Shown in pieces: positions 5,079 through 62,352 of a stretch of DNA of 64,000 bases. The notes under the pieces were generated by a model. It searched no databases. It saw only the letters and a program-made list of their open reading frames with translations, and was not told the origin of the DNA. Made by a program: the position numbers and the translations under genes. How positions within the stretch are numbered: position 1 is the first letter of the stretch; each line of letters opens with the position of its first letter. The stretch is from positions 248,001-312,000 of the IMG/VR virus record IMGVR_UViG_3300031576_000001. One strand, 5' to 3'.

Positions 5079-5372
5079 TAAACCCAGGCTCCAACCGTGG
5101 TCCAGGGACCACCCAGCGACAGCGGCGAGGACCGCCTCATCGCTAGGACCACCGCGGTCCAAAACACCCTTTGTGTCCTGGTACAGAAACACCCCCACCT
5201 CTCCGAGGGGTACTGAATCCGCAGAGAAGTACAGGTCACTCTTCCTCGGGTCCGGGGACTCCGAGGTGTGCGTGACCCGCACCTCCCCGGACCCGTCCGG
5301 GGTAGCGTACACGTACACACAACCACGGTTCCGCTCGATGAACCGCCGCTTTGAAAAGAACCCGTAGGACAT
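5079..5372 (-). CDS. Hypothetical protein (TTA at 5081-5079; standard stop at 5049)
   Basis: Directly downstream of a GTGAAT-N16-CGTA promoter; true end ambiguous. Confidence 0.6.
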
Positions 5373-25019: not shown

Positions 25020-25960
25020 CCATTCAGATTTCCCCGCAACACACTCAGGTGATTTACGACTGGTCGGGTTTCAAGACCAAGGCAACATCTTTTGGTTTGC
25101 GTCTGCGATACCACCAAGAGGTTAGTACGGTCACGGTTTACTTCTACGACCCGCCCGAGGTTCATTTGTGTTGCCTGGCTCGTGGTGGTGCGGAGGAGGC
25201 TGAGTTTCTGGCGTCTTACTTGCCCCTGATTCAGGATAGCCCTCTCTCAGAGGCTATCCTGACTGCGGTTGTGTCTGGCGAGCTACCTACAGCGGCTACC
25301 GCGCAAGCTGCCGTGCGAAAGACAGCTTACGTTGAGCGTACCTCAGAGGCGCGTAGATCCATCAAGTCTACCTCAGCTCTAGACACCAATGGTGGTACAG
25401 GAGCACGACAGGTTCAGCTCACCTACTATGATGATGCAGGTGACGGCCCATTCACGGAGGTTGTTCTCCTCAACGGGCTCACCGCGGTTGACACTACAGC
25501 TACAAACATTCGCTACCTGGCAAGAATGGAAGTCACGTCCGTAGGCTCCACGGGCACCAACCAGGGCACGATAGAGGTATACAATGGCACGGGGGGTGGT
25601 GCTACGGGCTCTGGCTTTGGGAGCATTGCTGTGGGGGATAATCAAACCCTATGGGCACACCATTACGTGGCAGCGAACCGTGTGTGTTACGTCAATACCG
25701 TAGCGGTCAACTCCTCTTCCGCTACAGCAGCTAACGCCTCAGTCTTTACGCTCAAAGTGAAGACCTTGAACAGTACTTCCCCGGAGGTAGCGTTGGGTGA
25801 CCGTATCCGCCTCATTGGTGCCACTTCACACTTGCAACGTGTGTACGGTAAGACACTGAGGATTCGTGGCCCTGCAAGAATACAAGCCTACGTTCAGCCT
25901 GAAACAATTTCTGCCGTGACCCAACGTGTGAGCTTTGATCTCTATGAGGTAGCGCCATGA
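25016..25960 (+). CDS. Putative virion structural protein (paralog of 23931)
   Basis: Same GTGAR..GPFTE..ATNIRY..DNQT.W.HHYV module; ATGA overlap. Confidence 0.6.
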   Translation: MTIQISPQHTQVIYDWSGFKTKATSFGLRLRYHQEVSTVTVYFYDPPEVHLCCLARGGAEEAEFLASYLPLIQDSPLSEAILTAVVSGELPTAATAQAAVRKTAYVERTSEARRSIKSTSALDTNGGTGARQVQLTYYDDAGDGPFTEVVLLNGLTAVDTTATNIRYLARMEVTSVGSTGTNQGTIEVYNGTGGGATGSGFGSIAVGDNQTLWAHHYVAANRVCYVNTVAVNSSSATAANASVFTLKVKTLNSTSPEVALGDRIRLIGATSHLQRVYGKTLRIRGPARIQAYVQPETISAVTQRVSFDLYEVAP

Positions 25961-29526: not shown

Positions 29527-30375
29527 ATGTGCATCACAGCCAACGCAGCCAACCTCTCTGAGACTCGGATTTACGCCGGGGAAGCACGCGACCCCGTAGG
29601 GGAGGTGGTTCACGTCCTGGGCTACCAGAACACAGCGGAGAACCTGGATACCAGCGGGGGCAACATGATGATCCTCCCCCTACCTGCGGCACGAGAGGTA
29701 CGCCCGGACGATGTGCGCGTAGCCACGGGTCTTGACGCAACGGTGCTCGAAGCCATGGCGCTGAGAGTCGAGCGCGTTACACGGAGCCTTGGGACGAAGG
29801 ACTATAACAGCCTCGACTACGTTTTCGACGTGGGCTCCTACACAGTGGTCCTCTCTCCTACCCCAGAGGGGGTCAAGGCTGCCATGACTAAGGTGCCCCT
29901 ACCGCGCCAGCCCAAGAGGCTGGGTTTCGACGTGGCGTCGTTTTACAGCAAGCACTACAGGGGGCACACCCTGGCACTGTGCTTTTGGGACAGGGCTATC
30001 GCAGCGGAGCCCATTTTCTTCACGTACCACCCCACTACGCCCACCCTCCTCTTCGCCCCGTGTCTCGACGCTCACGGGGAGGCGCCCCGTCCTGGCAAGG
30101 TCAAGACGGACCACACTTTGCTTTGGGGTACAACGCTGAGGAAGCTGCAACCTAAGAAGTGGGTACAGCCCGCGCCCATCGTGTTCGACCCCGTGCTCCG
30201 GGGACTCATCGGTCAGTACGTGGGGGCGCCGTTGCCCGCTGTCTTGCAGAACGGGGACTGCTTTTTTTCTGTGTCGGAGTTTGACGCGATGAGCCGGCCA
30301 AGCCGGTTCAACATACCGTGTCACCAGCGTAAAGCGCCGTGGGACCAAACGTACACGGAGATCGGGTTCTTTTAG
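29527..30375 (+). CDS. Hypothetical protein
   Basis: MCI..A.LS.T, YQNTA.N, M.LP.P and P.LDAH motifs; GGTGTA upstream. Confidence 0.7.
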   Translation: MCITANAANLSETRIYAGEARDPVGEVVHVLGYQNTAENLDTSGGNMMILPLPAAREVRPDDVRVATGLDATVLEAMALRVERVTRSLGTKDYNSLDYVFDVGSYTVVLSPTPEGVKAAMTKVPLPRQPKRLGFDVASFYSKHYRGHTLALCFWDRAIAAEPIFFTYHPTTPTLLFAPCLDAHGEAPRPGKVKTDHTLLWGTTLRKLQPKKWVQPAPIVFDPVLRGLIGQYVGAPLPAVLQNGDCFFSVSEFDAMSRPSRFNIPCHQRKAPWDQTYTEIGFF

Positions 30376-30377
30376 CC

Positions 30378-30596
30378 ATGCCACGCGAAGATCACATTGA
30401 GCTAGAGGGCGTAGTCACGGACGCTCTGGGGGGCGGGCAGTATTCTGTCAAAACCTCTTCAGGGCAAAGTGTAAGGGCTCAGTTGTCCGGCAGAATGAAG
30501 CGCAACAAGATCCGGGTTCTTCCTGGGGACGCGGTTCGCGTTGCCGTTTCACCCTACGACCCCACCCACGGACTCATCAATTACCGAGGAAAGTAG
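30378..30596 (+). CDS. infA: Translation initiation factor IF-1
   Basis: IELEGVV..AL...SGRMKRNKIRVLPGD.V.V..SPYD..G.I.YR, 72 aa. Confidence 0.93.
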   Translation: MPREDHIELEGVVTDALGGGQYSVKTSSGQSVRAQLSGRMKRNKIRVLPGDAVRVAVSPYDPTHGLINYRGK

Positions 30597-30601
30597 AGCA
30601 C

Positions 30602-30826
30602 ATGACCAAGCGCCGTAACCCAGTGGTCCGCAGCCCCGAAGCACAAGCCGAGATTACCGAGAGGAAGCTGGGCAGAAAGCACCGCTTTCGCTTGCTCAAA
30701 CGTGCCTCAGCCTCGCCACCCAACACCACACCGCCCGGAGGCGGGGGCAACGAGAGCCCAACCAGCGAGCCTAGCGAGCCTAGCGAGCACAGCGAGCACA
30801 GCGAGGCTTCCGTTGCAGCACCCTGA
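30602..30826 (+). CDS. Small basic/low-complexity protein
   Basis: ORF just after infA. Confidence 0.4.
   Translation: MTKRRNPVVRSPEAQAEITERKLGRKHRFRLLKRASASPPNTTPPGGGGNESPTSEPSEPSEHSEHSEASVAAP
30764..30805 (+). repeat. 9-bp tandem repeat AGCGAGC(CT/AC) x4.7
   Basis: Seen directly; encodes SEP/SEH repeats. Confidence 0.85.
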
Positions 30827-47776: not shown

Positions 47777-49102
47777 TCAACCTACCACAAAGAGACACCA
47801 CCGACCACCCTGGTACTGCTCCGTAAACGTGTGCGTGACACCTACCACGGCTATCCTGGGGGGCAATCGCGCGTCCGTATGAACGTACACCCAAGAGCGC
47901 ATTCCCTTGAGCCGATGCCTGCCCACAGACTTCCACTCCCGGGCTGCACCCGCAACCACCCCCCCCTGCTTCTCAAAACTGGGCGCCAAAGCCGTCCAGT
48001 CCACAGGGTTGAAGACTACATGACCCCCAGCAGCCCCCGTCAAGTTGATAACCTCAGAGACCGTATGCGTCCGCGTCATCAGGTCCAGCCCCCCTGACGT
48101 GGGTGACAAGAGACCCACAGCCTCTCGGTACGACGCCTCAAGAGACTGCAAAGCCTCTCGGGCTACGCCGGCTTGCTGTACAACCTCCTCCCGCGTCATG
48201 AGCCCCACGTCGCGCCACCACGGACGAGGAGCATCCACGCTAGGCGCCACACCCAGCGAAACCCAGCCCCTAGAGACCCCACAGGCCAGGGAGGTAGGCT
48301 CAGCTTTGACTACGGAACACTCAGAAGTCGGCTCAGCGTGAGGCACACCCTTGAGGAGGTCCATGTGGCGGCGCAAGTCCTCGACCAAAAACACGTCCTC
48401 ATCTTGCCCACCCCTGCAGATTGACGGACCCAGGACCGTAACACGGACCAAAGGCGTGCCGTCTCGGTACACACCAAGACAAACCACCCGAAAACCATCG
48501 GGAATATCCCCGTCCCGCCACATACCCGAAAACGTCTCGGATGATGAGTGTGACTGCACACCACACCCCTCCCTCACCACGTAAACCTCCCCAACACGAG
48601 GAAAAAGAAGCACCGTCTCACGCAAGAAGTGCTCCCCCTCGAAAAACACGGCGGTCGCCGCCCCACCCACCAGCACCATCACGCCAAGCAGACCCCCTCC
48701 CTCCGCAACCTCAAGAGCCATCACCACCCCCCCGGGGTACGGCTTCGTCCTACGTAGCACGCCCACCGTCGCAAGAAGCCTCTCCCGCAAAGAGACAACC
48801 TCCTCTTTCGGGCTGCCTTGCATAGGCTCATCGCCCACAGGGACCGTCAGGTGCAAAAAGTCCTCCCGCAACACAACGTCGTACTCCTCATCACCGCCAA
48901 TCCTGCAGACCCGGAGATGCACCACGTCCACCCCCGTTTTGAGAGTGCCCACCCCCGCCACCGTGAACCGAGTAGACTCAGACCCCCACGAGCACTGCCT
49001 AGGAGTCTCAGGGGCGCTCCTCAACACGCCCACAACTACCCCGTCAGCACCTAGCCTCAACCGGTACACGCCGCCTAGCACCACCTTAGCCTTCTCGCTC
49101 AT
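47777..49102 (-). CDS. Repeat-module hypothetical protein (paralog of 46008)
   Basis: Shared DGTPLV.V motif and C-terminal domain. Confidence 0.6.
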   Translation of the reverse strand: MSEKAKVVLGGVYRLRLGADGVVVGVLRSAPETPRQCSWGSESTRFTVAGVGTLKTGVDVVHLRVCRIGGDEEYDVVLREDFLHLTVPVGDEPMQGSPKEEVVSLRERLLATVGVLRRTKPYPGGVVMALEVAEGGGLLGVMVLVGGAATAVFFEGEHFLRETVLLFPRVGEVYVVREGCGVQSHSSSETFSGMWRDGDIPDGFRVVCLGVYRDGTPLVRVTVLGPSICRGGQDEDVFLVEDLRRHMDLLKGVPHAEPTSECSVVKAEPTSLACGVSRGWVSLGVAPSVDAPRPWWRDVGLMTREEVVQQAGVAREALQSLEASYREAVGLLSPTSGGLDLMTRTHTVSEVINLTGAAGGHVVFNPVDWTALAPSFEKQGGVVAGAAREWKSVGRHRLKGMRSWVYVHTDARLPPRIAVVGVTHTFTEQYQGGRWCLFVVG

Positions 49103-49166
49103 ACCCCCCACCTTACACCAAGACCGAGAAGCCCCACGCCCCCGTAAGCACAAAGAAGCCTACCCC

Positions 49167-49934
49167 CTACGGAGAGGAGACCCCCAACAGCCACCGGGGC
49201 GTCCCTTCACCCAGCAACCTGGAGTCCCTTAGCTCACCCCTGGCAAGCTCAAGATACCGCGGAGACACTACGCCAGCAAGCGTAGCACGCTCACTCAAAC
49301 ATGGCGTGACACTCTCTCGGGTACCCTTCAAGAGAAAGTGCTCAAGTTGGGAGCGAGCCGAAGACACCTCACTCATCGAACGAAACCACGTACCACGTAC
49401 ACGCTCTACCCGATGTTTCCTCTCCGCACACGCCTTCTGGTACCGACTCACCGCCCACCCACACGCACCTACACCACCCACCAAGAACACAAGAGACAAC
49501 CACCACACCGAAACCCACCACCCCACCAATGGCGCAACCCCCACCCCAAACAAGCCCGCCACGAACACCAACCACGAAAGCCCACCAAACCCCACAGGAG
49601 ACGCCTCCAAGTCAGCCAACTCTAGCTCACACGCCCTCCCCACCAATGCCAACGCTACGCACTCCCTCTCTACGTGCAAAACAACCCGGGTAGACTCCCC
49701 CTCCGTCAGCACCGAAGCCTGTAGCCCACGCGCAAACTCGACTCGGAGACCCCTCTCCTCTCGCTTACGCCACTCCTCATGCTTCTTCGCAATAACCTCC
49801 TCACCCCTCTCCAGAAGCCACCTCTTCCACAACCGCCTCCTCAAAGAAGCATACCCCTCCAGGCTCAACCCGTAACCCCTCGCCTCCCTCCGCTCCTTGA
49901 CCGTCAACGCTGACACCTTCAACTTGACCGACAT
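49167..49934 (-). CDS. Membrane protein
   Basis: Two hydrophobic segments; GGTGTA upstream. Confidence 0.5.
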   Translation of the reverse strand: MSVKLKVSALTVKERREARGYGLSLEGYASLRRRLWKRWLLERGEEVIAKKHEEWRKREERGLRVEFARGLQASVLTEGESTRVVLHVERECVALALVGRACELELADLEASPVGFGGLSWLVFVAGLFGVGVAPLVGWWVSVWWLSLVFLVGGVGACGWAVSRYQKACAERKHRVERVRGTWFRSMSEVSSARSQLEHFLLKGTRESVTPCLSERATLAGVVSPRYLELARGELRDSRLLGEGTPRWLLGVSSP

Positions 49935-50050
49935 AACCAGCCCCTTACACCCTCCCCCCAAGAGAAAAGGCTGAGCCAAAAAAGCACCCTCCCTAACCTA
50001 CGCCTCACCTCAGCCCCAGCCCCCAGCCTAAAGGGTGTATACCCACACCC

Positions 50051-50712: not shown

Positions 50713-51747
50713 TCAGAGCTTCTTGCAGCCTGCGACGTACCACTGGCGAGCCGCGTCGGATACGGCTTTCTGAGCCGTTTTCGCGTCTAGCCCGGAACAA
50801 GCTAGCTCAGCGTTGCACTCCTTGAGCACGTCCGCCGTCAACCAAGCCAGAAAGACACCGGTTTTCTTGGGGTCGAAGCTACCCCCACAGACCACAGAAA
50901 GCCCCTGCTCCAGGCGGGCGCCCGTGACGACCAAAGAGGCGAAATCGGCGGCGTTTCGGGTTACCGTGGCGCTGGCTTGGGCTGGCGCCGTCCTGGTGAC
51001 CGCGCAAGCGTGGTGCTTCTCGCCCTTGGCTTTGAAGCAGAGGTTGGAAAAGCGCTTATAATCGCTGCCCAGAGAGGGCTCGTCAGCCTCAGCCCCCGAG
51101 GGCACGGGGTAGAAGACCAGCCCTTCGCCCGTGCCCTCTACGCCAAAGGTGTTGCGTACCCAGGGGTCGCACTCCTCGACAGCGAGGACGTGCTGGTTGA
51201 TCCGGTCTAGCGTGGGCTGTAGAGCTTCGTCGGAAGCCGCCCAGTTCACCATGTAGGCTTCGCCGTCCTGGTACCAGGGGAGCACGTAGCAGCCGGGGAT
51301 GACCTGGGTCAGCCGGGAGAGGGTCTCTGGATCGTCGAGGAAGTCGATAACCCCAGGGTGGTCAACGAGGCGGGCAGCAAAGACGGCAAAGACCTTCGCT
51401 TTGAGGAGGTTGACGGCGACGCCCTTCTGAATGCCGGGTCCACACCACTCCCCGAAGAGGACCAGGGCGCCCGCCAGAGGAGCCAGCTTGGCTATCGTTG
51501 CCTGGCGCTCGTAGACCCACCTAGCAAAGCCCGCATTGTCCGAGTCCAGGGAGAGCACGCTGGTGCGGGACAGGGCAGTTACCCCCTCTTGGCTGATCTT
51601 TATGCCGGCGTTGGTGCCATGGAGCTTCACCTTGGCGCGGTAGCTCACGGTTGACGCCCCCTGGTCAAGAAGCTCCGGGTAGAGGGTCAGCTTGCGCCTG
51701 GCATTGTGAAAGTTGTCAATCTCGGTCCACTTGACGTGCTCTGTCAT
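50713..51747 (-). CDS. RNA ligase, Rnl2 family
   Basis: KLHGTNAG (motif I), SR, FGEWCGPGIQKG, GEGLV, FKAK. Confidence 0.88.
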   Translation of the reverse strand: MTEHVKWTEIDNFHNARRKLTLYPELLDQGASTVSYRAKVKLHGTNAGIKISQEGVTALSRTSVLSLDSDNAGFARWVYERQATIAKLAPLAGALVLFGEWCGPGIQKGVAVNLLKAKVFAVFAARLVDHPGVIDFLDDPETLSRLTQVIPGCYVLPWYQDGEAYMVNWAASDEALQPTLDRINQHVLAVEECDPWVRNTFGVEGTGEGLVFYPVPSGAEADEPSLGSDYKRFSNLCFKAKGEKHHACAVTRTAPAQASATVTRNAADFASLVVTGARLEQGLSVVCGGSFDPKKTGVFLAWLTADVLKECNAELACSGLDAKTAQKAVSDAARQWYVAGCKKL

Positions 51748-51806
51748 GCCCGAGAGGGTACACCGCCCGGCGCTCAACCTCTCAGGGGGACCACCACCCC
51801 CTTTCA

Positions 51807-51849
51807 AAAACCCTCACGCTGATACGGCAAACCCAAAGAAATTGAAAGC
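51807..51849 (+). repeat. Left arm of 43-bp inverted repeat
   Basis: AAAACCCTCACGCTGATACGGCAAACCCAAAGAAATTGAAAGC; 42/43 match to the reverse complement of 52746-52788. Confidence 0.9.
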
Positions 51850-56776: not shown

Positions 56777-57199
56777 ATGCTGAAGACACTTGACGAGCTA
56801 GACAAAGAGGCTACAGAGGCGGGCGTGTCTGTCCCTGTGTGGATGCGTAACGCGGTAGCCAAGAACCCAGAGTATGTTTTCTGGGGTCCAGACCAGGATT
56901 ATATGTGGAAAGCGGGCACCGGGTGGGAGGCTCCGCTAGCCTTTGCCTCTTGGGGTGACTGCAACCTCGTGCTTGATGACTTGAACGAGGTTGTACACTT
57001 CTACTTCGGGGTCAACGGCGATGACCCGGAGAGGGTGACCTTGACGTTGACCTTCTGGCTACTACACCCCCGCCAGAGCGCCTCTCGGGGGGTCCGTATT
57101 CACCGGGTAGCTCAGGCTGACTTGAGAAATGTCTACCGGTTCCTTCGTCGTGCTGCCACGCGCAACGCTCAGAGGTTTGCCAAGGTGCCTCGTCGGTGA
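56777..57199 (+). CDS. Hypothetical protein
   Basis: GGGAG RBS. Confidence 0.6.
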   Translation: MLKTLDELDKEATEAGVSVPVWMRNAVAKNPEYVFWGPDQDYMWKAGTGWEAPLAFASWGDCNLVLDDLNEVVHFYFGVNGDDPERVTLTLTFWLLHPRQSASRGVRIHRVAQADLRNVYRFLRRAATRNAQRFAKVPRR

Positions 57200-57585
57200 T
57201 TGTTCTCGACGATGCTGAGCCTGCGGTATTGGGTGAGCCTGTCCAGGCTTACAGGAATCTCTCTGTGCGAGAGGGGCGGCTCTACTCGGTACGGCTCAGG
57301 GGACGGTTAATCGCCAGGGTACAAGACCTTTGGTTGTACGATGTTACTTTTCGTGTGCGACCTGGGGGTCGCAGGCGTGCTTTGCGAGAGGGTGTGCGCA
57401 ACGTACACGCCTTTGTCTCTGGCACAGCGGTCTCTCTCATGCCTAGAGGGCTACTGTGGCAGAGAGCCAGCTACAACCCCTTTCTCACTGACCGGGCTGG
57501 CTTTTTTCTGGTGGAGTCGGGTCAGGAGGTGTCTGCGGCACGCTATGCGCGTTTGGACCAGGAGGGGTGCTTTGTGGTGCTGTAG
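57196..57585 (+). CDS. Phage hypothetical protein (NVHAFV motif); carries an internal TTA at 57307
   Basis: YRNL, YSV, RNVHAFV and YNPF motifs. Confidence 0.6.
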   Translation: MIVLDDAEPAVLGEPVQAYRNLSVREGRLYSVRLRGRLIARVQDLWLYDVTFRVRPGGRRRALREGVRNVHAFVSGTAVSLMPRGLLWQRASYNPFLTDRAGFFLVESGQEVSAARYARLDQEGCFVVL

Positions 57586-57943
57586 CTTTGCGCTTGTGGG
57601 TGGGGCAGTTTGGGTGATAGTGCCCCACCTGTCCGCAGCTACGGCACTCTTTCTTGCGGGCAGAGCCACCAGCTAGCAACGTGTTGACAGCTTCTTCGCT
57701 CCACAGGGAAGTCACCTTACGCCTAGAGTCAGCGTTGAACAACTTGAGGTAGGCAACGACCAGCTTAACCGTGTCAAGCCAGTAAGGGTCTTCTGCCCTC
57801 AAAGCCCGCACAGCGTCGTCAATCTCGCCCAGGGGGAGCGTCGTCCAGGCTTCGGTGGCTATAGGCTGGTTGTAACGACTGAGGAGGAGGATCGCGGTAA
57901 GCCGCTCAGAGAGGGTGGGAGGGGTGGTACTCGTGTTGGGCAT
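57485..57943 (-). CDS. Hypothetical protein with CCHC zinc knuckle
   Basis: CRSCGQVGHYHPNCP. Confidence 0.5.
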   Translation of the reverse strand: MPNTSTTPPTLSERLTAILLLSRYNQPIATEAWTTLPLGEIDDAVRALRAEDPYWLDTVKLVVAYLKLFNADSRRKVTSLWSEEAVNTLLAGGSARKKECRSCGQVGHYHPNCPTHKRKATAPQSTPPGPNAHSVPQTPPDPTPPEKSQPGQ

Positions 57944-58233
57944 GGGGCTAGGCGTAGGTGTCTAAGCTCCTTGACACGGCTGTCAAAGACCAGAGCCGTC
58001 AACTGGTTACCCAGGTCGGGCTCGCAGAAGTTAGCGGTCGCCTTGGGGAGCAGCGCGTAGAGCGCCCCTTCGTTGTCCACCTAGAGGAAGACCAGCGTGT
58101 TGCCACCCTCGTACCAAAGGCGAGCTTTCTCCGGGTTACGCATGACAAACTCTACCAGGGCGTGCATCCCCTGGACAGCCTGAGCGCCAGGGGAGAGGTC
58201 GCTACGTGTCACGATGTAAAGTTTCTGTGTCAT
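57898..58233 (-). CDS. Peptidyl-tRNA hydrolase, Pth2-like, with in-frame TAG at codon 51 (58083-58081); not in the ORF track as a whole
   Basis: MTQKLYIVTRSDLSPGAQAVQGMHA...W..GGNTLVFL*VDNEGAL...FCEPDLGNQLTAL; first downstream TTA at 57900-57898. Confidence 0.75.
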
Positions 58234-58444
58234 GGTTTTCTTGGTCTCCTATCACCCCGAGTGGGGTACTACACAGGACACCCACGTCTCCCAAGGCTTT
58301 CTTTGCCTTGTCTGCTACCTCGGGCACCCACGTTGCGAAGATGAGGTAGCCCTCGTTGTCGTTGGACTCTACCCACACGGTTCTGTGCCCAGCACGGATA
58401 GCGCGTGTAATTGCCTCGCGGGCTACTTCTTGGATGGTTGGCAT
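58202..58444 (-). CDS. Hypothetical protein
   Basis: AAGGA RBS. Confidence 0.45.
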   Translation of the reverse strand: MPTIQEVAREAITRAIRAGHRTVWVESNDNEGYLIFATWVPEVADKAKKALGDVGVLCSTPLGVIGDQENHDTETLHRDT

Positions 58445-58454
58445 GGTTTCCTTG

Positions 58455-59663
58455 TTAGAAGCGAATGCGCCAGCTTACGGTGATGCTTCGTATCGTGCGC
58501 TGCCAGGTGTGTTCCCGGGTTACACGTCGCGTGTAAAAGGAGTCCTCTGACACCCCTGTAGCCCTCGCGTGACTCTCTATGAAAGCCAACTCACCCACGG
58601 TCATGTCGTCTACGTCCTTGTTGAAGTAGGTGCAGTGCTCCGTGGTGGTGCCAACACTGGCGGTGCTGTCCGGGTTCCACCCAAGGAACTCCTCGTCGGT
58701 ACGGTCCGGTTGCCCTGGCCGAGGGAAGGGCTTGACCAGGCTGTAGAACACGGTTTCCAGAGGGAGCCCCCAGTGCGCGCCCGTGACCGCCAGTGTCAAC
58801 TTGTCCGGGGAGACGTGTAGTTCATGCCAGCGAAAAGCAGTGCTCTCTTCGCTACCCTGGAAAGAAAAGTCCGCCCGCCGCCCCGTGTCAAGCTCGATGA
58901 CGGTGCAACCCTGGGTGCGCTCTGCGCAGAGTAGGTAGTCGTGCCCGTTGGGGTGCGCTATCACCCATGCGAAGGGGAAGTCAGTGTGTTGCCTCCTGAC
59001 CTCGCACCAAAGCCCTTCAACCTGACCGTGACGGTAGCAGGGGGTTTTGCTGTCTGCGTCGAGCACCTTGGTAATGGTCAGCGTGTAGGTGCGCCCGTCA
59101 GCTCGCGGGGGACTAACGTGCCTCTCTACCTCCCCGTGGTTCTCTTTGGCAAAGAGGGTGTCAGCATGAAACCCTTCCAAAGCCTTCTGTACTTGCGTGT
59201 CCAGCTTGGCTACAGCTTGTCTACGCAAGCCAGGCGAGAGGCTACGTAGCTCCGGGTAGAGCCTCTTGGCTTCGCCGTAGGGAGTCTTGTTGCGGTGCTG
59301 AGTCAGGACTCGCCAGGGCTCATCCGACGTGGGGTCGAGAGCCTTCTCCAACCCAGGGATACACAAGCTGCGTAGCACGTCGATCTGGCTTACAGAGAGG
59401 TTTCGTCCGTGCTGATACTTCGGCTCTTGCCGCCAGAGGGGGCGCCCACGAAGGATGCTATAGGCTACCAATAGCGCCCTTGTCTGTACCCCGAGGTACT
59501 TGCGCTGGGCTTGTAGCTTGCACCGCTCTTGTCCGGTAGCTGCCCCACCCTCTTTGAGCTTCTGTATCTCAGCGGAGAGGGCTCTACTCCTAGCTTCCCT
59601 GACCTTGATCTGCTCTTTGATAAGAGCCCGCAAGGCGAGCTTGTCTGCGTCGTGGTCTTCCAT
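58455..59663 (-). CDS. Hypothetical protein
   Basis: N-terminal R..LVAYSILRGRP..QE motif; 402 aa. Confidence 0.65.
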   Translation of the reverse strand: MEDHDADKLALRALIKEQIKVREARSRALSAEIQKLKEGGAATGQERCKLQAQRKYLGVQTRALLVAYSILRGRPLWRQEPKYQHGRNLSVSQIDVLRSLCIPGLEKALDPTSDEPWRVLTQHRNKTPYGEAKRLYPELRSLSPGLRRQAVAKLDTQVQKALEGFHADTLFAKENHGEVERHVSPPRADGRTYTLTITKVLDADSKTPCYRHGQVEGLWCEVRRQHTDFPFAWVIAHPNGHDYLLCAERTQGCTVIELDTGRRADFSFQGSEESTAFRWHELHVSPDKLTLAVTGAHWGLPLETVFYSLVKPFPRPGQPDRTDEEFLGWNPDSTASVGTTTEHCTYFNKDVDDMTVGELAFIESHARATGVSEDSFYTRRVTREHTWQRTIRSITVSWRIRF

Positions 59664-59804
59664 GGTAACAATCTCTCGTGTTTGGGTGCCTGGCGGAAGG
59701 GGTACACCGAGAGAGCCACGGGGAGGACCACGCTTGCGGGGGAGCTAGAAGAAGGCTTTCATGGTGAGCGTAGGGTAACCAGGGTTAGAGGTTGGTACAA
59801 GGGG

Positions 59805-59877
59805 TGCGCCCTGCGGGAGTTGAACCCGCGCAAAAGAACTTTAGAGGCTCTGTACTCTACCTTTGAGTTAAAGGCGC
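59805..59877 (-). tRNA. tRNA with CUA anticodon (amber suppressor type)
   Basis: GCGCCTT-TA-ACTC AAAGGTA GAGT-AC-AGAGC CTCTAAA GTTCT-TTTGC-GCGGG TTCAACT CCCGC-AGGGCGC-A. All four stems pair; loop is CU-CUA-AA; no encoded CCA. Confidence 0.8.
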
Positions 59878-59923
59878 GTTGTGTGGGCTTCTGCTCGATC
59901 TCACGAGGTAGCCCGTTGTGAAG

Positions 59924-60367
59924 TCAGTCTTCCGAGAGGCGGTCAGGGCGCCTGTGGTCCTGGCGAGCCTTCCCGCCGCCCCCGCTGCGCTTACCCTTCC
60001 CACCACCGCCGCCTCCACGGTCACCGCCGCCCCCGCCGCCAAAGTCACGGCGAGGGGGTGGGCGAGGGTTGGCAGCGCGGCGGGCGGTCTCGGTCTCGGA
60101 GATCCACTGGTCCGCCTGGGTGATGAGGTCGGCGGCGCGGTAGAGGTCCGTCCTGACGATGCCATCCTCGAAGAAGGCGCGCACGTTGAGGTAGGGGGCA
60201 CCGGTACCGTCCTTGCGTGTCCGACCGACCGAGACGGAGTACAGAACCCCCCTGTCCGTGGTGGCCGTCTTGACGGTACAGATGACCTCACCATCGGTAA
60301 AGGTCTGGGCTACCTCCCAAACGAGGGGAGGGCGGGAGGGATCGGCAGAAGAGGCGTAGTCGCTCAT
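59924..60367 (-). CDS. Hypothetical protein with Gly/Arg-rich tail (possibly RNA-binding)
   Basis: GGGGDRGGGG/KR-rich C-terminus. Confidence 0.55.
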   Translation of the reverse strand: MSDYASSADPSRPPLVWEVAQTFTDGEVICTVKTATTDRGVLYSVSVGRTRKDGTGAPYLNVRAFFEDGIVRTDLYRAADLITQADQWISETETARRAANPRPPPRRDFGGGGGGDRGGGGGGKGKRSGGGGKARQDHRRPDRLSED

Positions 60368-60414
60368 GGCTTTGTCTTGGTTCTCTCTCAAAAGGCGTTA
60401 TACACCGGCAAGGG

Positions 60415-61329
60415 TAAGCTGTCGGCAAGCGTAAGCAGTTGGTGGTTCAAGGCGATCAAGGCGTCGCGGTCTTCTAGAGGCTCCAAGAGGGTGCTGTCTA
60501 CGCCCTCCAAGCCGTAGAACGCCCCGAGGAGAGCCCCGACCATGCTAGCAATGGTGTCAGTATCACCCCCTCTACGGATGGCTAGCTCGATACCCTCCTT
60601 AAAGGAGGTAGCTACCGCGGCCAGCGCAAAGACAACCGCCACGTCTGCTGTGACCCCTCTAGGTGGGAGAGCCTTGAGGTACCCCGCCAGGGAGTGCCTG
60701 GGCAAGGGCTGAGGGAAGTTCTCAAAAATGTCGTGTAGTTTCCCGGCTGGCAGCATGGTAGCCACCTTCTTAGCCAGGTAGGTAGGTGTGGTTACCTGTA
60801 GGGCTAGTAGACCCACCCCAAGAGCGATAGCCATGCTGCCGTGCCTTGCCTCGGGGGACTGGTGGGTCAACGAAGCGTCCACGTCGGCGTATCGCGCGGC
60901 TAGGTCCAGGTCATGCCGGAAAGCCAGCCCGATGGGCGATACCCTCATGGCGGTACCGTTGCCCTGTGAGCCAGCGACCCCACAGGTTGTCGGGCTCTTG
61001 GTGCGTAGGTACTTCAAGATAGCCTCACGCACGGTGTTCCCCATCCCCCTGCACGAACCGGACTGAAACCACTTGTAGTAGCTCTCCATGACGGCGCTGG
61101 GGTTGAACGTCTTCTCTTGGACGAGGGACTTGGCAAGCGCCACGGTCATCTGGGTGTCGTCCGTGACCTGACCTGGCTCAATCATGAGCCAATTGTTGCG
61201 CGTGGGTAGGTAGGAGTGCCCATCCCAGTCAAGCAAGAGGGGGCTGAGGCTCATCCTCCCCTCGAAAGGTGCGCCCAGTGCGTCCCCTACGGCAACCCCG
61301 ACGAGCGGGGCAGGCGTGCGGTCTTTCAC
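60415..61329 (-). CDS. ADP-ribosylglycohydrolase (ARH/DraG family); ends at TTA 60417-60415
   Basis: GDALGAP.E, TDDT, GNG.AMR..P, TH and GGDTDT. Confidence 0.92.
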
Positions 61330-61559
61330 AGGTCCATTCCTTCCGCTAGTCGGGCTTGCTCAGGGTTGAGCGTCCCGCGGTCCCTGGCAACTTTGACAAG
61401 CTGCAAAAACTCCCTGGTTAGATGGTCCTCCGTGAGCGCCGCGAGGATAGCGTCCAAGTCGCCAGTCGCAAAACCAGAAACCAGCCCGTCGAGGTAATCT
61501 CTTCGGAGAATGTAACCCTCTCGGTACAGCTTTACCCAGCGGTCCACTTGAAGCGTCAT
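61326..61559 (-). CDS. Hypothetical protein
   Basis: Coupled operon member. Confidence 0.45.
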   Translation of the reverse strand: MTLQVDRWVKLYREGYILRRDYLDGLVSGFATGDLDAILAALTEDHLTREFLQLVKVARDRGTLNPEQARLAEGMDL

Positions 61560-61690
61560 TGTACAATCCAGGCTTTCTCGGCGGTCCAGTCGTGAAGCCA
61601 GTCCCCCCAGCGCGTGGGAAGCACTTCCATGAGGGGGTGTGCTACGCAGTTATGTAGGACGCGCCAGACACGCTTTTCCAGGTGGAGCAT
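61556..61690 (-). CDS. Small phage protein (HN.VAHPL motif)
   Basis: MLHLEKRVWRVLHNCVAHPLME..WLHDWT; ATGA coupling. Confidence 0.5.
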   Translation of the reverse strand: MLHLEKRVWRVLHNCVAHPLMEVLPTRWGDWLHDWTAEKAWIVQ

Positions 61691-61722
61691 TACACCTATC
61701 ATAGAGGGTATAATAGCACACC

Positions 61723-62352
61723 ATGACAGATTGGAGCAAGTTCCTTGAAAATCTGCTCCCGGGCATCATTACAGGAGCCGGATCGGCGGTTACGACCGTC
61801 TACACGTTCGTCCAGGGCTTGCGAAAACAAGTCACGGAGCTTGAAGTCAAGGTTGCCGCCCTGGACACGGCTTTGAAAGCCCTGGATGGTAGGGTGGGTG
61901 TGTACGACCCCGTTTCTGGGAGTCGCTCTGGTTTGTTCAAGGGACTCTCAGACCTCTCTGGTACCGTGGTGACCATTGATGCTCGCGTGGGGCACTTCGA
62001 CTCCAACACGGGGGCGCGCACGGGAATGCTTGGCGTTCTTGACGCCCTCTCGGACAAGCTGGAGCGCGAAGCCAACCAAGCCCAGAGAGGGTCTATCGAC
62101 ACCCAGGCTATTGAGGAGCGTATTGAGCGTAGGGTCCAGGTCAGGCTAGACCTCTTGGAGAGGCGCCTTGCGGAGCTAACGGAAATTGTGAACCAATGTG
62201 TGACCTACGAAAACTACGAAGTGACGAGCCAGCGCCGAGCGGAGGAACTGGTCAAGATCAGGGAGAGTGTAGCCTCCCTGGCGGGGATGCTCTCCGTGGT
62301 CAAGGGCTACCTGGACCCCACGCCAGCCCCGAAGAAGGGGGTGCCAAGGTGA
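61723..62352 (+). CDS. Membrane-anchored coiled-coil protein
   Basis: N-terminal hydrophobic segment, heptads, duplicated RVG..D..G.R.G. Confidence 0.6.
   Translation: MTDWSKFLENLLPGIITGAGSAVTTVYTFVQGLRKQVTELEVKVAALDTALKALDGRVGVYDPVSGSRSGLFKGLSDLSGTVVTIDARVGHFDSNTGARTGMLGVLDALSDKLEREANQAQRGSIDTQAIEERIERRVQVRLDLLERRLAELTEIVNQCVTYENYEVTSQRRAEELVKIRESVASLAGMLSVVKGYLDPTPAPKKGVPR

What the first reader, a model, noticed from the sequence alone, without database searches (positions are those of the whole stretch)
59805..59877. Amber-suppressor tRNA (CUA) in a genome that still ends genes with TAG
It forms a full cloverleaf with a CUCUAAA loop, G1-C72, A73, a short variable arm and an unusual 2-nt linker between the D and anticodon stems. 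It has GG and TTC, so it is not tRNA-Pyl-like. Suppressor tRNAs are known in TAG-recoded phages, but here infA and other genes end in TAG. This suggests partial or timed read-through, or a code in transition that is losing UAG and gaining UUA as a stop.
Basis: partly seen in the sequence, partly recalled or inferred. Interest (0 to 1): 0.75.

Follow-up and report, generated by a model that had tools for sequence, protein, structure and literature searches.

The report
Phage amber-suppressor tRNA with partner hydrolase
A huge phage that uses the normal genetic code carries a real stop-codon-reading tRNA; it belongs to a widespread, apparently undescribed two-gene unit with a small tRNA-ester hydrolase, and here that hydrolase gene itself contains the stop codon the tRNA reads.

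Summary
Window 59805-59877, minus strand, encodes a high-scoring class I tRNA with anticodon CUA (Rfam 55.5 bits). It is not tRNA-Pyl.

The window lies in a 322.6-kb IMG/VR phage record from a cave metagenome. The record uses the standard code: TAG ends about 25% of genes, infA included. TTA is an ordinary rare sense codon.

The tRNA is one half of a conserved module. On the same strand, 1.6 kb downstream, lies a divergent PTH2-family (peptidyl-tRNA hydrolase 2) gene at 58233-57859.
- In 89 of 121 diverged lineages of this gene, a stop-anticodon tRNA lies within 2.5 kb on the same strand. Most are CUA; a few are UUA or UCA. Usually the tRNA sits directly 3' of the gene.
- These lineages include Bxz1/I3-type mycobacteriophages, Lak megaphages and many uncultured huge phages.

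In the window the hydrolase gene has an in-frame TAG at codon 51. It is the only demonstrable in-frame TAG in the record. Twelve other cases carry an in-frame stop in this gene, each matching the anticodon of the partner tRNA wherever one is in the fetched DNA (all but one).

Best reading: a decode-then-hydrolyse pair in which hydrolase synthesis depends on suppression, giving feedback. The chemistry is inferred. Genome-wide recoding is not supported.

The parts
59805..59877 (-). tRNA with anticodon CUA (amber-decoding). Class I, A73, no encoded CCA: the gene continues ACC then C.
   Evidence: ARAGORN; Rfam RF00005 55.5 bits; cloverleaf fold.
57859..58233 (-). Divergent PTH2-family hydrolase gene. 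124 codons plus a terminal TAG at 57861-57859, with an in-frame TAG at codon 51.
   Evidence: Pfam PF01981 23.5 bits over residues 4-67, spanning the TAG; phrog_1866 E = 5e-13 over residues 2-82. Seven uninterrupted homologues at 41-57% identity. The genome search reports '1 TAG' inside the match.
58081..58083 (-). In-frame TAG, codon 51 of the hydrolase gene, context CTC TAG GTG.
   Evidence: Coding-potential scan: 0.95 upstream and 1.06 downstream, the strongest such site in 322 kb. It aligns with A/S/R in homologues. It is identical in an independent Logan assembly of the same sample at word depth about 12.
58246..58250 (-). AGGAG Shine-Dalgarno-like motif, 12 nt before the ATG of the hydrolase gene.
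   Evidence: Read directly from the sequence.
58455..59663 (-). 402-aa ORF of unknown function lying between the tRNA and the hydrolase gene.
   Evidence: No Pfam or PHROG hit. One 92-aa tblastn match, 39% identity, 3.2-3.5 kb upstream of the hydrolase gene in locus L043. In other lineages the gap usually holds an HNH endonuclease or nothing.
59924..60391 (-). 155-aa ORF immediately 5' of the tRNA, with a Gly/Arg-rich C-terminus. It ends in TGA.
   Evidence: Translation; coding score; no family hit.
60388..61329 (-). ADP-ribosylglycohydrolase gene, first gene of the same leftward gene run.
   Evidence: PF03747 205 bits.
57485..57943 (-). 152-aa ORF directly 3' of the hydrolase gene, with a weak CCHC zinc-knuckle match. 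Its start overlaps the tail of the hydrolase ORF.
   Evidence: PF00098 E = 0.009, below cutoff; sequence.
30339..30596 (+). infA (IF-1) ending in TAG at 30594-30596. Context for 'TAG is still a stop'. The next in-frame stop, TGA, is two codons later.
   Evidence: PF01176 69.4 bits; sequence.

Best explanation
The tRNA is a working amber-decoding tRNA. It operates as a unit with the nearby divergent PTH2-family hydrolase.

Shown:
- The tRNA is canonical apart from its anticodon.
- The hydrolase family has the Pth2 fold.
- The two genes are kept together on one strand across very diverged phages.
- In this phage the hydrolase mRNA cannot give a full-length protein unless UAG at codon 51 is decoded.

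Inferred:
- A host aminoacyl-tRNA synthetase charges the tRNA. The amino acid is unknown.
- The tRNA reads the internal UAG, so the hydrolase is made only when, and roughly as much as, suppression is active.
- The hydrolase then cleaves the ester bond of the acylated form of its partner tRNA, either peptidyl- or aminoacyl-tRNA(CUA).
- This either keeps read-through low or turns UAG decoding into chain release. That would explain how the phage can still end a quarter of its genes with TAG.
- The internal stop closes a negative-feedback loop, by the same logic as the in-frame UGA of prfB.
For: tRNA quality.

Standard code.

The in-frame TAG lies within a conserved domain, and the downstream motif EPDLGNQLTA is intact. 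It is the only such TAG in 322 kb.

Linkage between the hydrolase gene and a stop-anticodon tRNA:
- 40 of 58 lineages in the first sample and 49 of 63 in the second have such a tRNA within 2.5 kb, always on the same strand. In about 35 of them it is the only tRNA kind in the locus.
- The same holds in phage I3, where the tRNA is annotated tRNA-Pyl(cta), gene 167, next to 'peptidyl tRNA hydrolase', gene 166.
- It holds in the uncultured phages LR756500 and LR745208 and in Lak-B8.
- Two of four out-of-sample proteins show it.

The anticodon is conserved while the tRNA body is not: 47 distinct sequences with discriminator A, G or U.

In-frame stops in the hydrolase gene: 13 cases, 12 TAG and 1 TGA, at several positions. 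Where a partner tRNA is present in the fetched DNA (12 of 13; none for L150) the stop matches its anticodon. None is TAA and there are no frameshifts.

Fold: profile against PDB 2zv3, E = 4e-11. AF2 model pLDDT 96.4, with top Foldseek hits all Pth2/Bit1 at TM 0.75-0.81.

Some phages carry a canonical PTH2 as well, so the divergent family has a separate job.

TAG-ending genes show no excess of back-up stops, so read-through must be low or converted to termination.
Against: - No experiment shows charging, suppression or hydrolysis.
- A protein of about 100 aa cannot reach both the anticodon and the acceptor end. Specificity for the partner tRNA would have to come from the acceptor or T arm, and I did not test co-variation.
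- Known Pth2 enzymes act on free N-blocked aminoacyl-tRNA of any species.
- The GK and DAG motifs of canonical Pth2 are replaced in this family, so even the chemistry is uncertain.
- Most lineages have no internal stop, so feedback is not essential to the module.
- Four of the lineages with internal TAGs may be more broadly TAG-recoded. The neighbour-gene control is underpowered: 1 stop in 118 bins against 12 in 279.
- The TAG rests on one metagenome sample, seen only through assembled contigs.
Confidence: 0.45

Rival explanations
1. Generic clean-up partner. The tRNA is a real suppressor, but the hydrolase is an unspecific peptidyl-tRNA hydrolase. It mops up peptidyl-tRNAs and stalled complexes produced when ribosomes read through stops into 3' UTRs. 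The internal TAG then gives feed-forward induction in proportion to damage, not feedback on the tRNA.
For: - Pth2 enzymes are unspecific (established knowledge).
- Iyer et al. 2021 (PMC7824862) and Morgado & Vicente 2018 (PMC5966550) propose ribosome rescue.
- The family also sits next to other odd tRNAs, with AAU/AAA anticodons and 9-nt loops, in L027, L047 and L099.
- C1 mycobacteriophages also carry a tmRNA (PMC10281172 abstract).
Against: - The host already has an essential Pth.
- Some phages carry a canonical PTH2 beside the divergent one.
- The tight adjacency is to the stop-anticodon tRNA in particular, even inside arrays of 30 tRNAs.
Confidence: 0.25
2. No functional coupling. The hydrolase gene in this phage is a fresh pseudogene or an assembly variant. 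The linkage only reflects co-mobility of a tRNA and a small gene, for example by homing endonucleases.
For: - The TAG comes from a single sample.
- HNH endonuclease genes often lie beside or between the pair.
Against: - All 13 interrupted copies carry a single stop, and in the 12 with a partner tRNA in the fetched DNA it matches that tRNA's anticodon. There are no frameshifts, no TAA, and the downstream motifs are conserved.
- Linkage persists over lineages only 27-50% identical, with anticodon switches and order reversals.
Confidence: 0.08
3. Incipient or partial TAG recoding (code 15-like), as in crAss, Lak and other recoded phages. The suppressor is there to translate a set of TAG-containing, for example late, genes. 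The hydrolase gene is merely the first gene, or one of several, to have acquired a TAG.
For: - Borges et al. (bioRxiv 10.1101/2021.08.26.457843) describe suppressor acquisition before recoding.
- Lak phages carry the module.
- L011, L126, L137 and L148 gain ORF coverage when TAG is read as sense.
- The record is only 68% complete.
Against: - One in-frame TAG in 322 kb.
- TAG ends 25% of genes at 58.6% GC, whereas that model starts from TAG depletion at low GC.
- No release factor or synthetase gene in the record.
Confidence: 0.1
4. It is a pyrrolysine tRNA, which is ARAGORN's label.
For: Anticodon CUA. An extra layer on the anticodon stem.
Against: - GG in the D loop.
- UUC in the T loop.
- Two nucleotides between the acceptor and D stems.
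- A 4-5 nt variable loop.
- No PylS in the record.
Confidence: 0.01

Closest known systems
Suppressor tRNAs of stop-codon-recoded phages (crAss-like, Lak, Jade, Agate; Ivanova 2014, named from memory; Borges et al. preprint)
   Same: A phage-encoded tRNA with a stop anticodon, in a phage whose host uses the standard code. Charging by host synthetases is assumed. Lak phages even carry the same hydrolase family beside a UUA tRNA.
   Different: Here the genome is not recoded. TAG ends 25% of genes, GC is 58.6%, and only one gene holds an in-frame TAG. The 'code change module' described there is tRNA plus synthetase plus release factor, not tRNA plus PTH2-like hydrolase.
tRNA arrays of cluster C1 mycobacteriophages (Bxz1, I3) with an embedded 'peptidyl tRNA hydrolase' (Morgado & Vicente 2018, PMC5966550)
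   Same: Same hydrolase family at 42% identity. In I3 the next gene downstream is annotated tRNA-Pyl(cta).
   Different: The published descriptions note a PTH2-like gene in the arrays. They do not mention its pairing with the CUA tRNA. In the window the pair lies 280 kb from the array, and the hydrolase gene is TAG-interrupted.
Archaeal/eukaryotic Pth2 (PF01981; PDB 2zv3, 3erj, 1q7s)
   Same: The fold, and the conserved R, D, Q, H, A, T, A core positions.
   Different: Only 23.5 bits to Pfam PTH2. The GK(G)K and DAGxT segments are replaced by S/PGxQ and EPD. The family appears phage-restricted in my searches.
prfB (RF2) autoregulation by an in-frame UGA
   Same: A gene for a factor acting at a stop codon carries that very stop codon in frame, so its synthesis senses activity at that codon.
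   Different: Here no frameshift is needed, the decoding agent is a tRNA, and the direction of the loop is inferred rather than shown.

Membership tests
tRNA (Rfam RF00005) | Score above the gathering threshold over the full model, with a cloverleaf | tested here: met
   55.5 bits against 29, model positions 1-71; cloverleaf is the MFE fold.
tRNA (Rfam RF00005) | Conserved tertiary nucleotides (U8, A14, G18G19, U33, G53-U54-U55-C56, A58, C61) | tested here: met
   Read from the ARAGORN drawing and the sequence. One extra nucleotide at the 26/27 junction is the only oddity.
Nonsense (amber) suppressor tRNA | Anticodon complementary to UAG in a canonical 7-nt loop with U33 and purine 37 | tested here: met
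   Loop C-U-CUA-A-A.
Nonsense (amber) suppressor tRNA | In-frame UAG codons in genes that need decoding | tested here: met
   One gene: the PTH2-like ORF, codon 51.
Nonsense (amber) suppressor tRNA | Aminoacylation and measurable read-through | not testable with these tools
   The amino acid could not be inferred. There is no close paralogue among the phage's own tRNAs and no consistent isotype across the family.
tRNA-Pyl | Small D loop without G18G19, no T-psi-C, one nucleotide between acceptor and D stems, 3-nt variable loop | tested here: not met
   D loop AAAGGUA, T loop UUCAACU, U8-A9 present, variable loop 4-5 nt.
tRNA-Pyl | Cognate PylS encoded | tested here: not met
   No TIGR02367 match in the record, which is 68% complete.
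TAG-recoded phage (code 15-like) | Many genes interrupted by TAG; coding density rises when TAG is read as sense | tested here: not met
   Coverage 0.916 against 0.922 (TGA control 0.915). One supported in-frame TAG.
TAG-recoded phage (code 15-like) | TAG rare or absent as a terminator | tested here: not met
   81 of 327 genes end in TAG.
PTH2 (PF01981) | Profile match at or above the curated cutoff | tested here: met
   23.5 against 23 bits for the window protein, which is borderline. The family profile against PDB Pth2 2zv3 gives E = 4e-11.
PTH2 (PF01981) | Pth2 alpha/beta fold | tested here: met
   AF2 model of the 51%-identical homologue from L002, pLDDT 96.4. Foldseek ranks 1-13 are all Pth2/Bit1, TM 0.69-0.81. 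The window protein itself was not modelled, to avoid assigning a residue to the TAG.
PTH2 (PF01981) | Canonical active-site segments (GK...AQ..HA and DAGxT) | tested here: inconclusive
   AQ..HA and the T-A are kept. The Lys-bearing and DAG segments are replaced by family-specific invariants E-P-D.
PTH2 (PF01981) | Peptidyl-tRNA hydrolase activity | not testable with these tools
   Needs an enzyme assay.

The most novel reading that the evidence does not exclude
The tRNA and the PTH2-like enzyme together form a two-component termination device that does not need a release factor. The tRNA decodes the stop codon and takes the chain. The hydrolase then releases the chain from that tRNA. The protein is finished with one extra residue, without host RF1 or RF2. 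The cognate stop inside the hydrolase gene autoregulates the system as UGA does in prfB. This would explain four observations: any amino-acid identity is tolerated, all three stop anticodons occur, TAG stays a normal terminator, and there are no back-up stops.
Probability: 0.15. Interest if true: 0.95.

Novelty: new variant of a known kind. Interest (0 to 1): 0.72.

Why it matters
Suppressor tRNAs in phages have so far been read as tools of genome-wide stop-codon recoding. Here one sits in a standard-code, GC-rich huge phage. It turns out to belong to a module of stop-decoding tRNA plus divergent PTH2-like hydrolase.

The hydrolase family is large: about 2,700 clusters at 50% identity. The pairing with the tRNA spans mycobacteriophages, Lak megaphages and many uncultured phages. 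I found no description of it in the searchable literature.

The repeated appearance of the cognate stop inside the hydrolase gene is evolutionary evidence that these tRNAs really decode stops. It also points to a self-regulating circuit.

Bxz1/I3-type phages of M. smegmatis carry the module, so it can be tested directly in a standard laboratory system. It may also yield naturally co-evolved tRNA/enzyme pairs of use for genetic-code engineering.

Tried and rejected
- **DNA relatives.** No DNA-level relatives of window 57000-62000 in the phage collection. No exact-pattern relatives of the tRNA in IMG/VR.
- **Amino-acid identity of the tRNA.** Comparison with the phage's own tRNAs reached at most 67% identity and showed no clear parent. 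Comparison with 331 labelled tRNAs from all loci gave no consistent isotype.
- **Other in-frame TAGs.** Ten candidates were examined with X at the TAG against Pfam and PHROGs. No domain spans a TAG: three show domain hits only downstream of it, seven have no hits.
- **Back-up stops after TAG.** No enrichment; Mann-Whitney p = 0.66 and 0.30.
- **Base after the stop.** The three TAG cases examined (window, L011, L056) are followed by G. With n = 3, and G the commonest first codon base, this is not significant.
- **Fusions.** Longer family members have no second Pfam domain. A few carry the conserved upstream 107-aa ORF in their N-terminal part.
- **The 402-aa ORF.** Its homology to that upstream ORF family is not significant: hhalign E = 0.022, probability 2%.
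- **Bacterial genomes.** Two pattern scans found no relatives of the hydrolase.
- **Structure job.** I dropped those rows and did not resend them.
- **Reads.** Only Logan contigs of the probable source sample were available, so allele frequencies at the TAG could not be measured.
- **Complex prediction.** Not used, because it gives no verdict for RNA partners.

Full report
**1. What the window is**

The window is bases 248001-312000 of a single 322,633-bp IMG/VR virus record. The record is linear, CheckV estimates 68% completeness, and GC is 58.6%.
- The only sequencing runs that hold it are from a cave metagenome.
- The record carries about 40 tRNA genes in one array at 21-31 kb.
- The window holds infA, an RNA ligase, an ADP-ribosylglycohydrolase, an L5 gp82-like gene and many ORFans.
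- It is therefore a huge phage, probably near 470 kb when complete.

**2. The observation**

ARAGORN and Rfam both find one tRNA in the window, at 59805-59877 on the minus strand, with anticodon CUA. Its Rfam score of 55.5 bits is the sixth best among the phage's tRNAs.

ARAGORN's label 'tRNA-Pyl' only reflects the anticodon:
- The D loop has GG and the T loop has UUC.
- Two nucleotides separate the acceptor and D stems.
- No PylS is encoded.

The CUA tRNA lies alone, about 280 kb from the tRNA array.

**3. The genetic code of the phage**

- Under code 11, greedy ORFs cover 91.6% of the record. Reading TAG as sense gives 92.2%, no more than the TGA control gives.
- TAG ends 81 of 327 confidently coding ORFs, infA among them.
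- TAG-ending genes have no excess of nearby back-up stops.
- TTA occurs in frame 109 times in 257 genes.
- The record has no release-factor gene. It has no Glx-, Lys/Asp/Asn- or Trp/Tyr-type synthetase gene either.

So there is no genome-wide recoding and no sign that UUA is becoming a stop.

**4. One in-frame TAG, in a telling place**

I trained a hexamer coding model on the phage's long ORFs. I then scanned every stop codon for coding signal on both sides.

One site stood out: a TAG at window 58083-58081 (-). It is codon 51 of an ORF that starts at 58233, behind an AGGAG motif.
- With X at the TAG, the product matches Pfam PTH2 over residues 4-67 and phrog_1866 over residues 2-82. Both matches span the TAG.
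- Seven uninterrupted homologues align through it, with A, S or R at that column.
- The genome search independently reports '1 TAG' inside the PTH2 match.
- The ten other TAGs with some coding signal on both sides show no domain spanning the stop. Three have domain hits only downstream of it and seven have none, so they look like boundaries between in-frame neighbours.
- An independent Logan assembly of the same sample is identical over 57400-60400.

The gene lies 1.6 kb downstream of the tRNA on the same strand. A 402-aa ORF of unknown function lies between them.

**5. The pair is conserved**

Named or catalogued phages:
- In three long metagenomic contigs that encode homologues, a CUA tRNA sits immediately 3' of the gene.
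- In Mycobacterium phage I3 the gene annotated 'peptidyl tRNA hydrolase' (166) is followed by the annotated tRNA-Pyl(cta) (167). 206 mycobacteriophage records hold the gene.
- The uncultured huge phages LR756500 and LR745208 have a CUA tRNA and a UUA tRNA beside it.
- Lak-B8 has a UUA tRNA 600 nt upstream.

Two IMG/VR scans gave 121 lineages after dereplication at 80% protein identity.
- 89 lineages have a stop-anticodon tRNA within 2.5 kb, always on the same strand and mostly directly 3' of the gene. Most are CUA, with UUA and UCA in a few.
- In about 35 of them the locus holds no other kind of tRNA.
- One apparent exception, L007, has a degenerate CUA tRNA that both finders missed.
- A longer paralogous subfamily ('RMYGLVPYN...', also present in Aeromonas phage 65) has no tRNA.

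Out of sample:
- I looked up four representatives from a 1.8-billion-protein library, in which the family numbers about 2,700 clusters at E <= 1e-10.
- Two have a CUA tRNA right after the gene, one contig was too short, and one has odd AAU-anticodon tRNAs upstream.

The 47 distinct suppressor tRNAs in the first sample share the anticodon loop. They do not share acceptor stems or discriminator bases.

**6. Cognate stops inside the hydrolase gene recur**

Besides the window, twelve other cases carry a single in-frame stop in this gene:
- Eleven are TAG, and ten of those have a CUA tRNA in the fetched DNA. The eleventh, L150, shows none before its contig ends about 1.4 kb downstream.
- One is TGA. 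Its only nearby tRNA has anticodon UCA.
- None is TAA and none is a frameshift. The downstream invariant motifs are intact.
- The stops fall at several positions. The window, L106 and L126 share one alignment column.

A tblastn control masked tRNA genes and required support from at least three other lineages. It found 12 such stops in the hydrolase genes and one, a TGA, in all neighbouring genes. Neighbours offer less comparable sequence (118 bins against 279), so the contrast is suggestive rather than conclusive.

A crude ORF-coverage test suggests that four of these lineages may be more widely TAG-recoded.

**7. What the protein is**

- A profile of 46 family members matches solved Pth2 structures, with 2zv3 at E = 4e-11.
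- An AlphaFold model of the 51%-identical L002 homologue has pLDDT 96.4. It superposes on Pth2/Bit1 at TM 0.75-0.81.
- The R, D, Q, H, A, T, A core is shared. The Lys-bearing and DAG segments of canonical Pth2 are replaced by family-specific invariants, E-P-D.
- Three phages (L006, L024, L075) carry a canonical PTH2 near the divergent one; L006's scores 104 bits. The divergent family therefore presumably does something different.

**8. Mechanism**

Shown by sequence:
- The tRNA is a good amber-decoding tRNA.
- It is kept together with a Pth2-fold enzyme.
- In this phage the enzyme cannot be made full length unless UAG is decoded.

From this I infer that the tRNA is charged by a host synthetase and does decode UAG. 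I further infer that the enzyme acts on the ester bond of the acylated partner tRNA. That would either restrain read-through or convert UAG decoding into release. It would also let the phage keep TAG as a terminator without back-up stops. The internal stop makes enzyme synthesis depend on suppressor activity.

Rivals:
- An unspecific clean-up hydrolase.
- Plain incipient recoding.
- A pseudogene with an orphan tRNA.
- tRNA-Pyl.

The last two are poorly supported.

**9. Novelty**

Already known:
- Suppressor tRNAs in recoded phages, and occasional suppressors in standard-code relatives.
- CUA tRNAs annotated in C1 mycobacteriophages.
- PTH2-like genes in jumbo phages and in C1 tRNA arrays.

Six full-text searches found no paper that links the two genes, or that notes the self-embedded cognate stops. 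I therefore rate this a new variant of a known kind. The more radical reading, a tRNA-based termination device, is not excluded.

Noticed in passing
Genome 21.2-31.3 kb (outside the window); G000:C1:30809-30881: An array of about 40 tRNA genes on the + strand. It includes tRNA-Ile(UAU), and two tRNAs found by Rfam only (25064-25150 and 30730-30800). ARAGORN found no tRNA-Trp, tRNA-Cys or tRNA-Leu(UAA).
   Followed up: partly
L027:5933-6007; L047:4995-5070 and 5113-5186; L099:2449-2604: In a few lineages the hydrolase gene is flanked by odd tRNAs instead of a stop-anticodon tRNA. They have predicted anticodons AAU or AAA, several with 9-nt anticodon loops and a shared UAAU(G/A)A core. Some resemble the suppressor tRNAs of other lineages.
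   Followed up: partly
L024:5688-6008 and 12 other lineages; proteins P0079, P0112, P0141, P0148: A conserved ORF of about 107 aa with no known family (motif E.RH.HIAY..RGR..EQIE) lies directly 5' of the hydrolase gene in 13 lineages. In some database proteins it forms the N-terminal part fused to the hydrolase. Its likeness to the N-terminus of the window's 402-aa ORF is not significant (hhalign E = 0.022).
   Followed up: partly
L006:3626-4168 (also L024, L075): A canonical PTH2 gene (104 bits for L006; L024 and L075 by BLAST clustering) lies about 1.4 kb upstream of the divergent PTH2-like gene in L006, so these phages carry both kinds.
   Followed up: no
L007:6328-6400 (and L008): A degenerate CUA tRNA overlaps the extended 3' end of the hydrolase ORF. 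It has a C-C mismatch in the anticodon stem and a T loop without UUC. ARAGORN and Rfam both missed it.
   Followed up: partly
window 50713-51807 (-): An RNA ligase gene (PF09414), about 6 kb from the module. With the tRNA array, it may point to tRNA repair.
   Followed up: no
window 48001-50000: Strong strand asymmetry: GC skew -0.37, AT skew +0.30. It coincides with a 458-aa Val/Gly-rich ORF on the minus strand (47777-49153) that has no family match.
   Followed up: no
window 59924-60391 (-) and 57485-57943 (-): The ORFs flanking the module look like nucleic-acid binders. One has a Gly/Arg-rich (RGG-like) tail. The other has a weak CCHC zinc-knuckle match.
   Followed up: no
window 58081-58083; L011:2410; L056:6178: The three in-frame TAGs whose context I examined are each followed by G (TAG-G). 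The number is too small to interpret.
   Followed up: partly
window 60388-61329 (-); L041/L042:2275-3045: An ADP-ribosylglycohydrolase gene lies near the hydrolase gene in the window and in one other lineage, at 25% identity.
   Followed up: no
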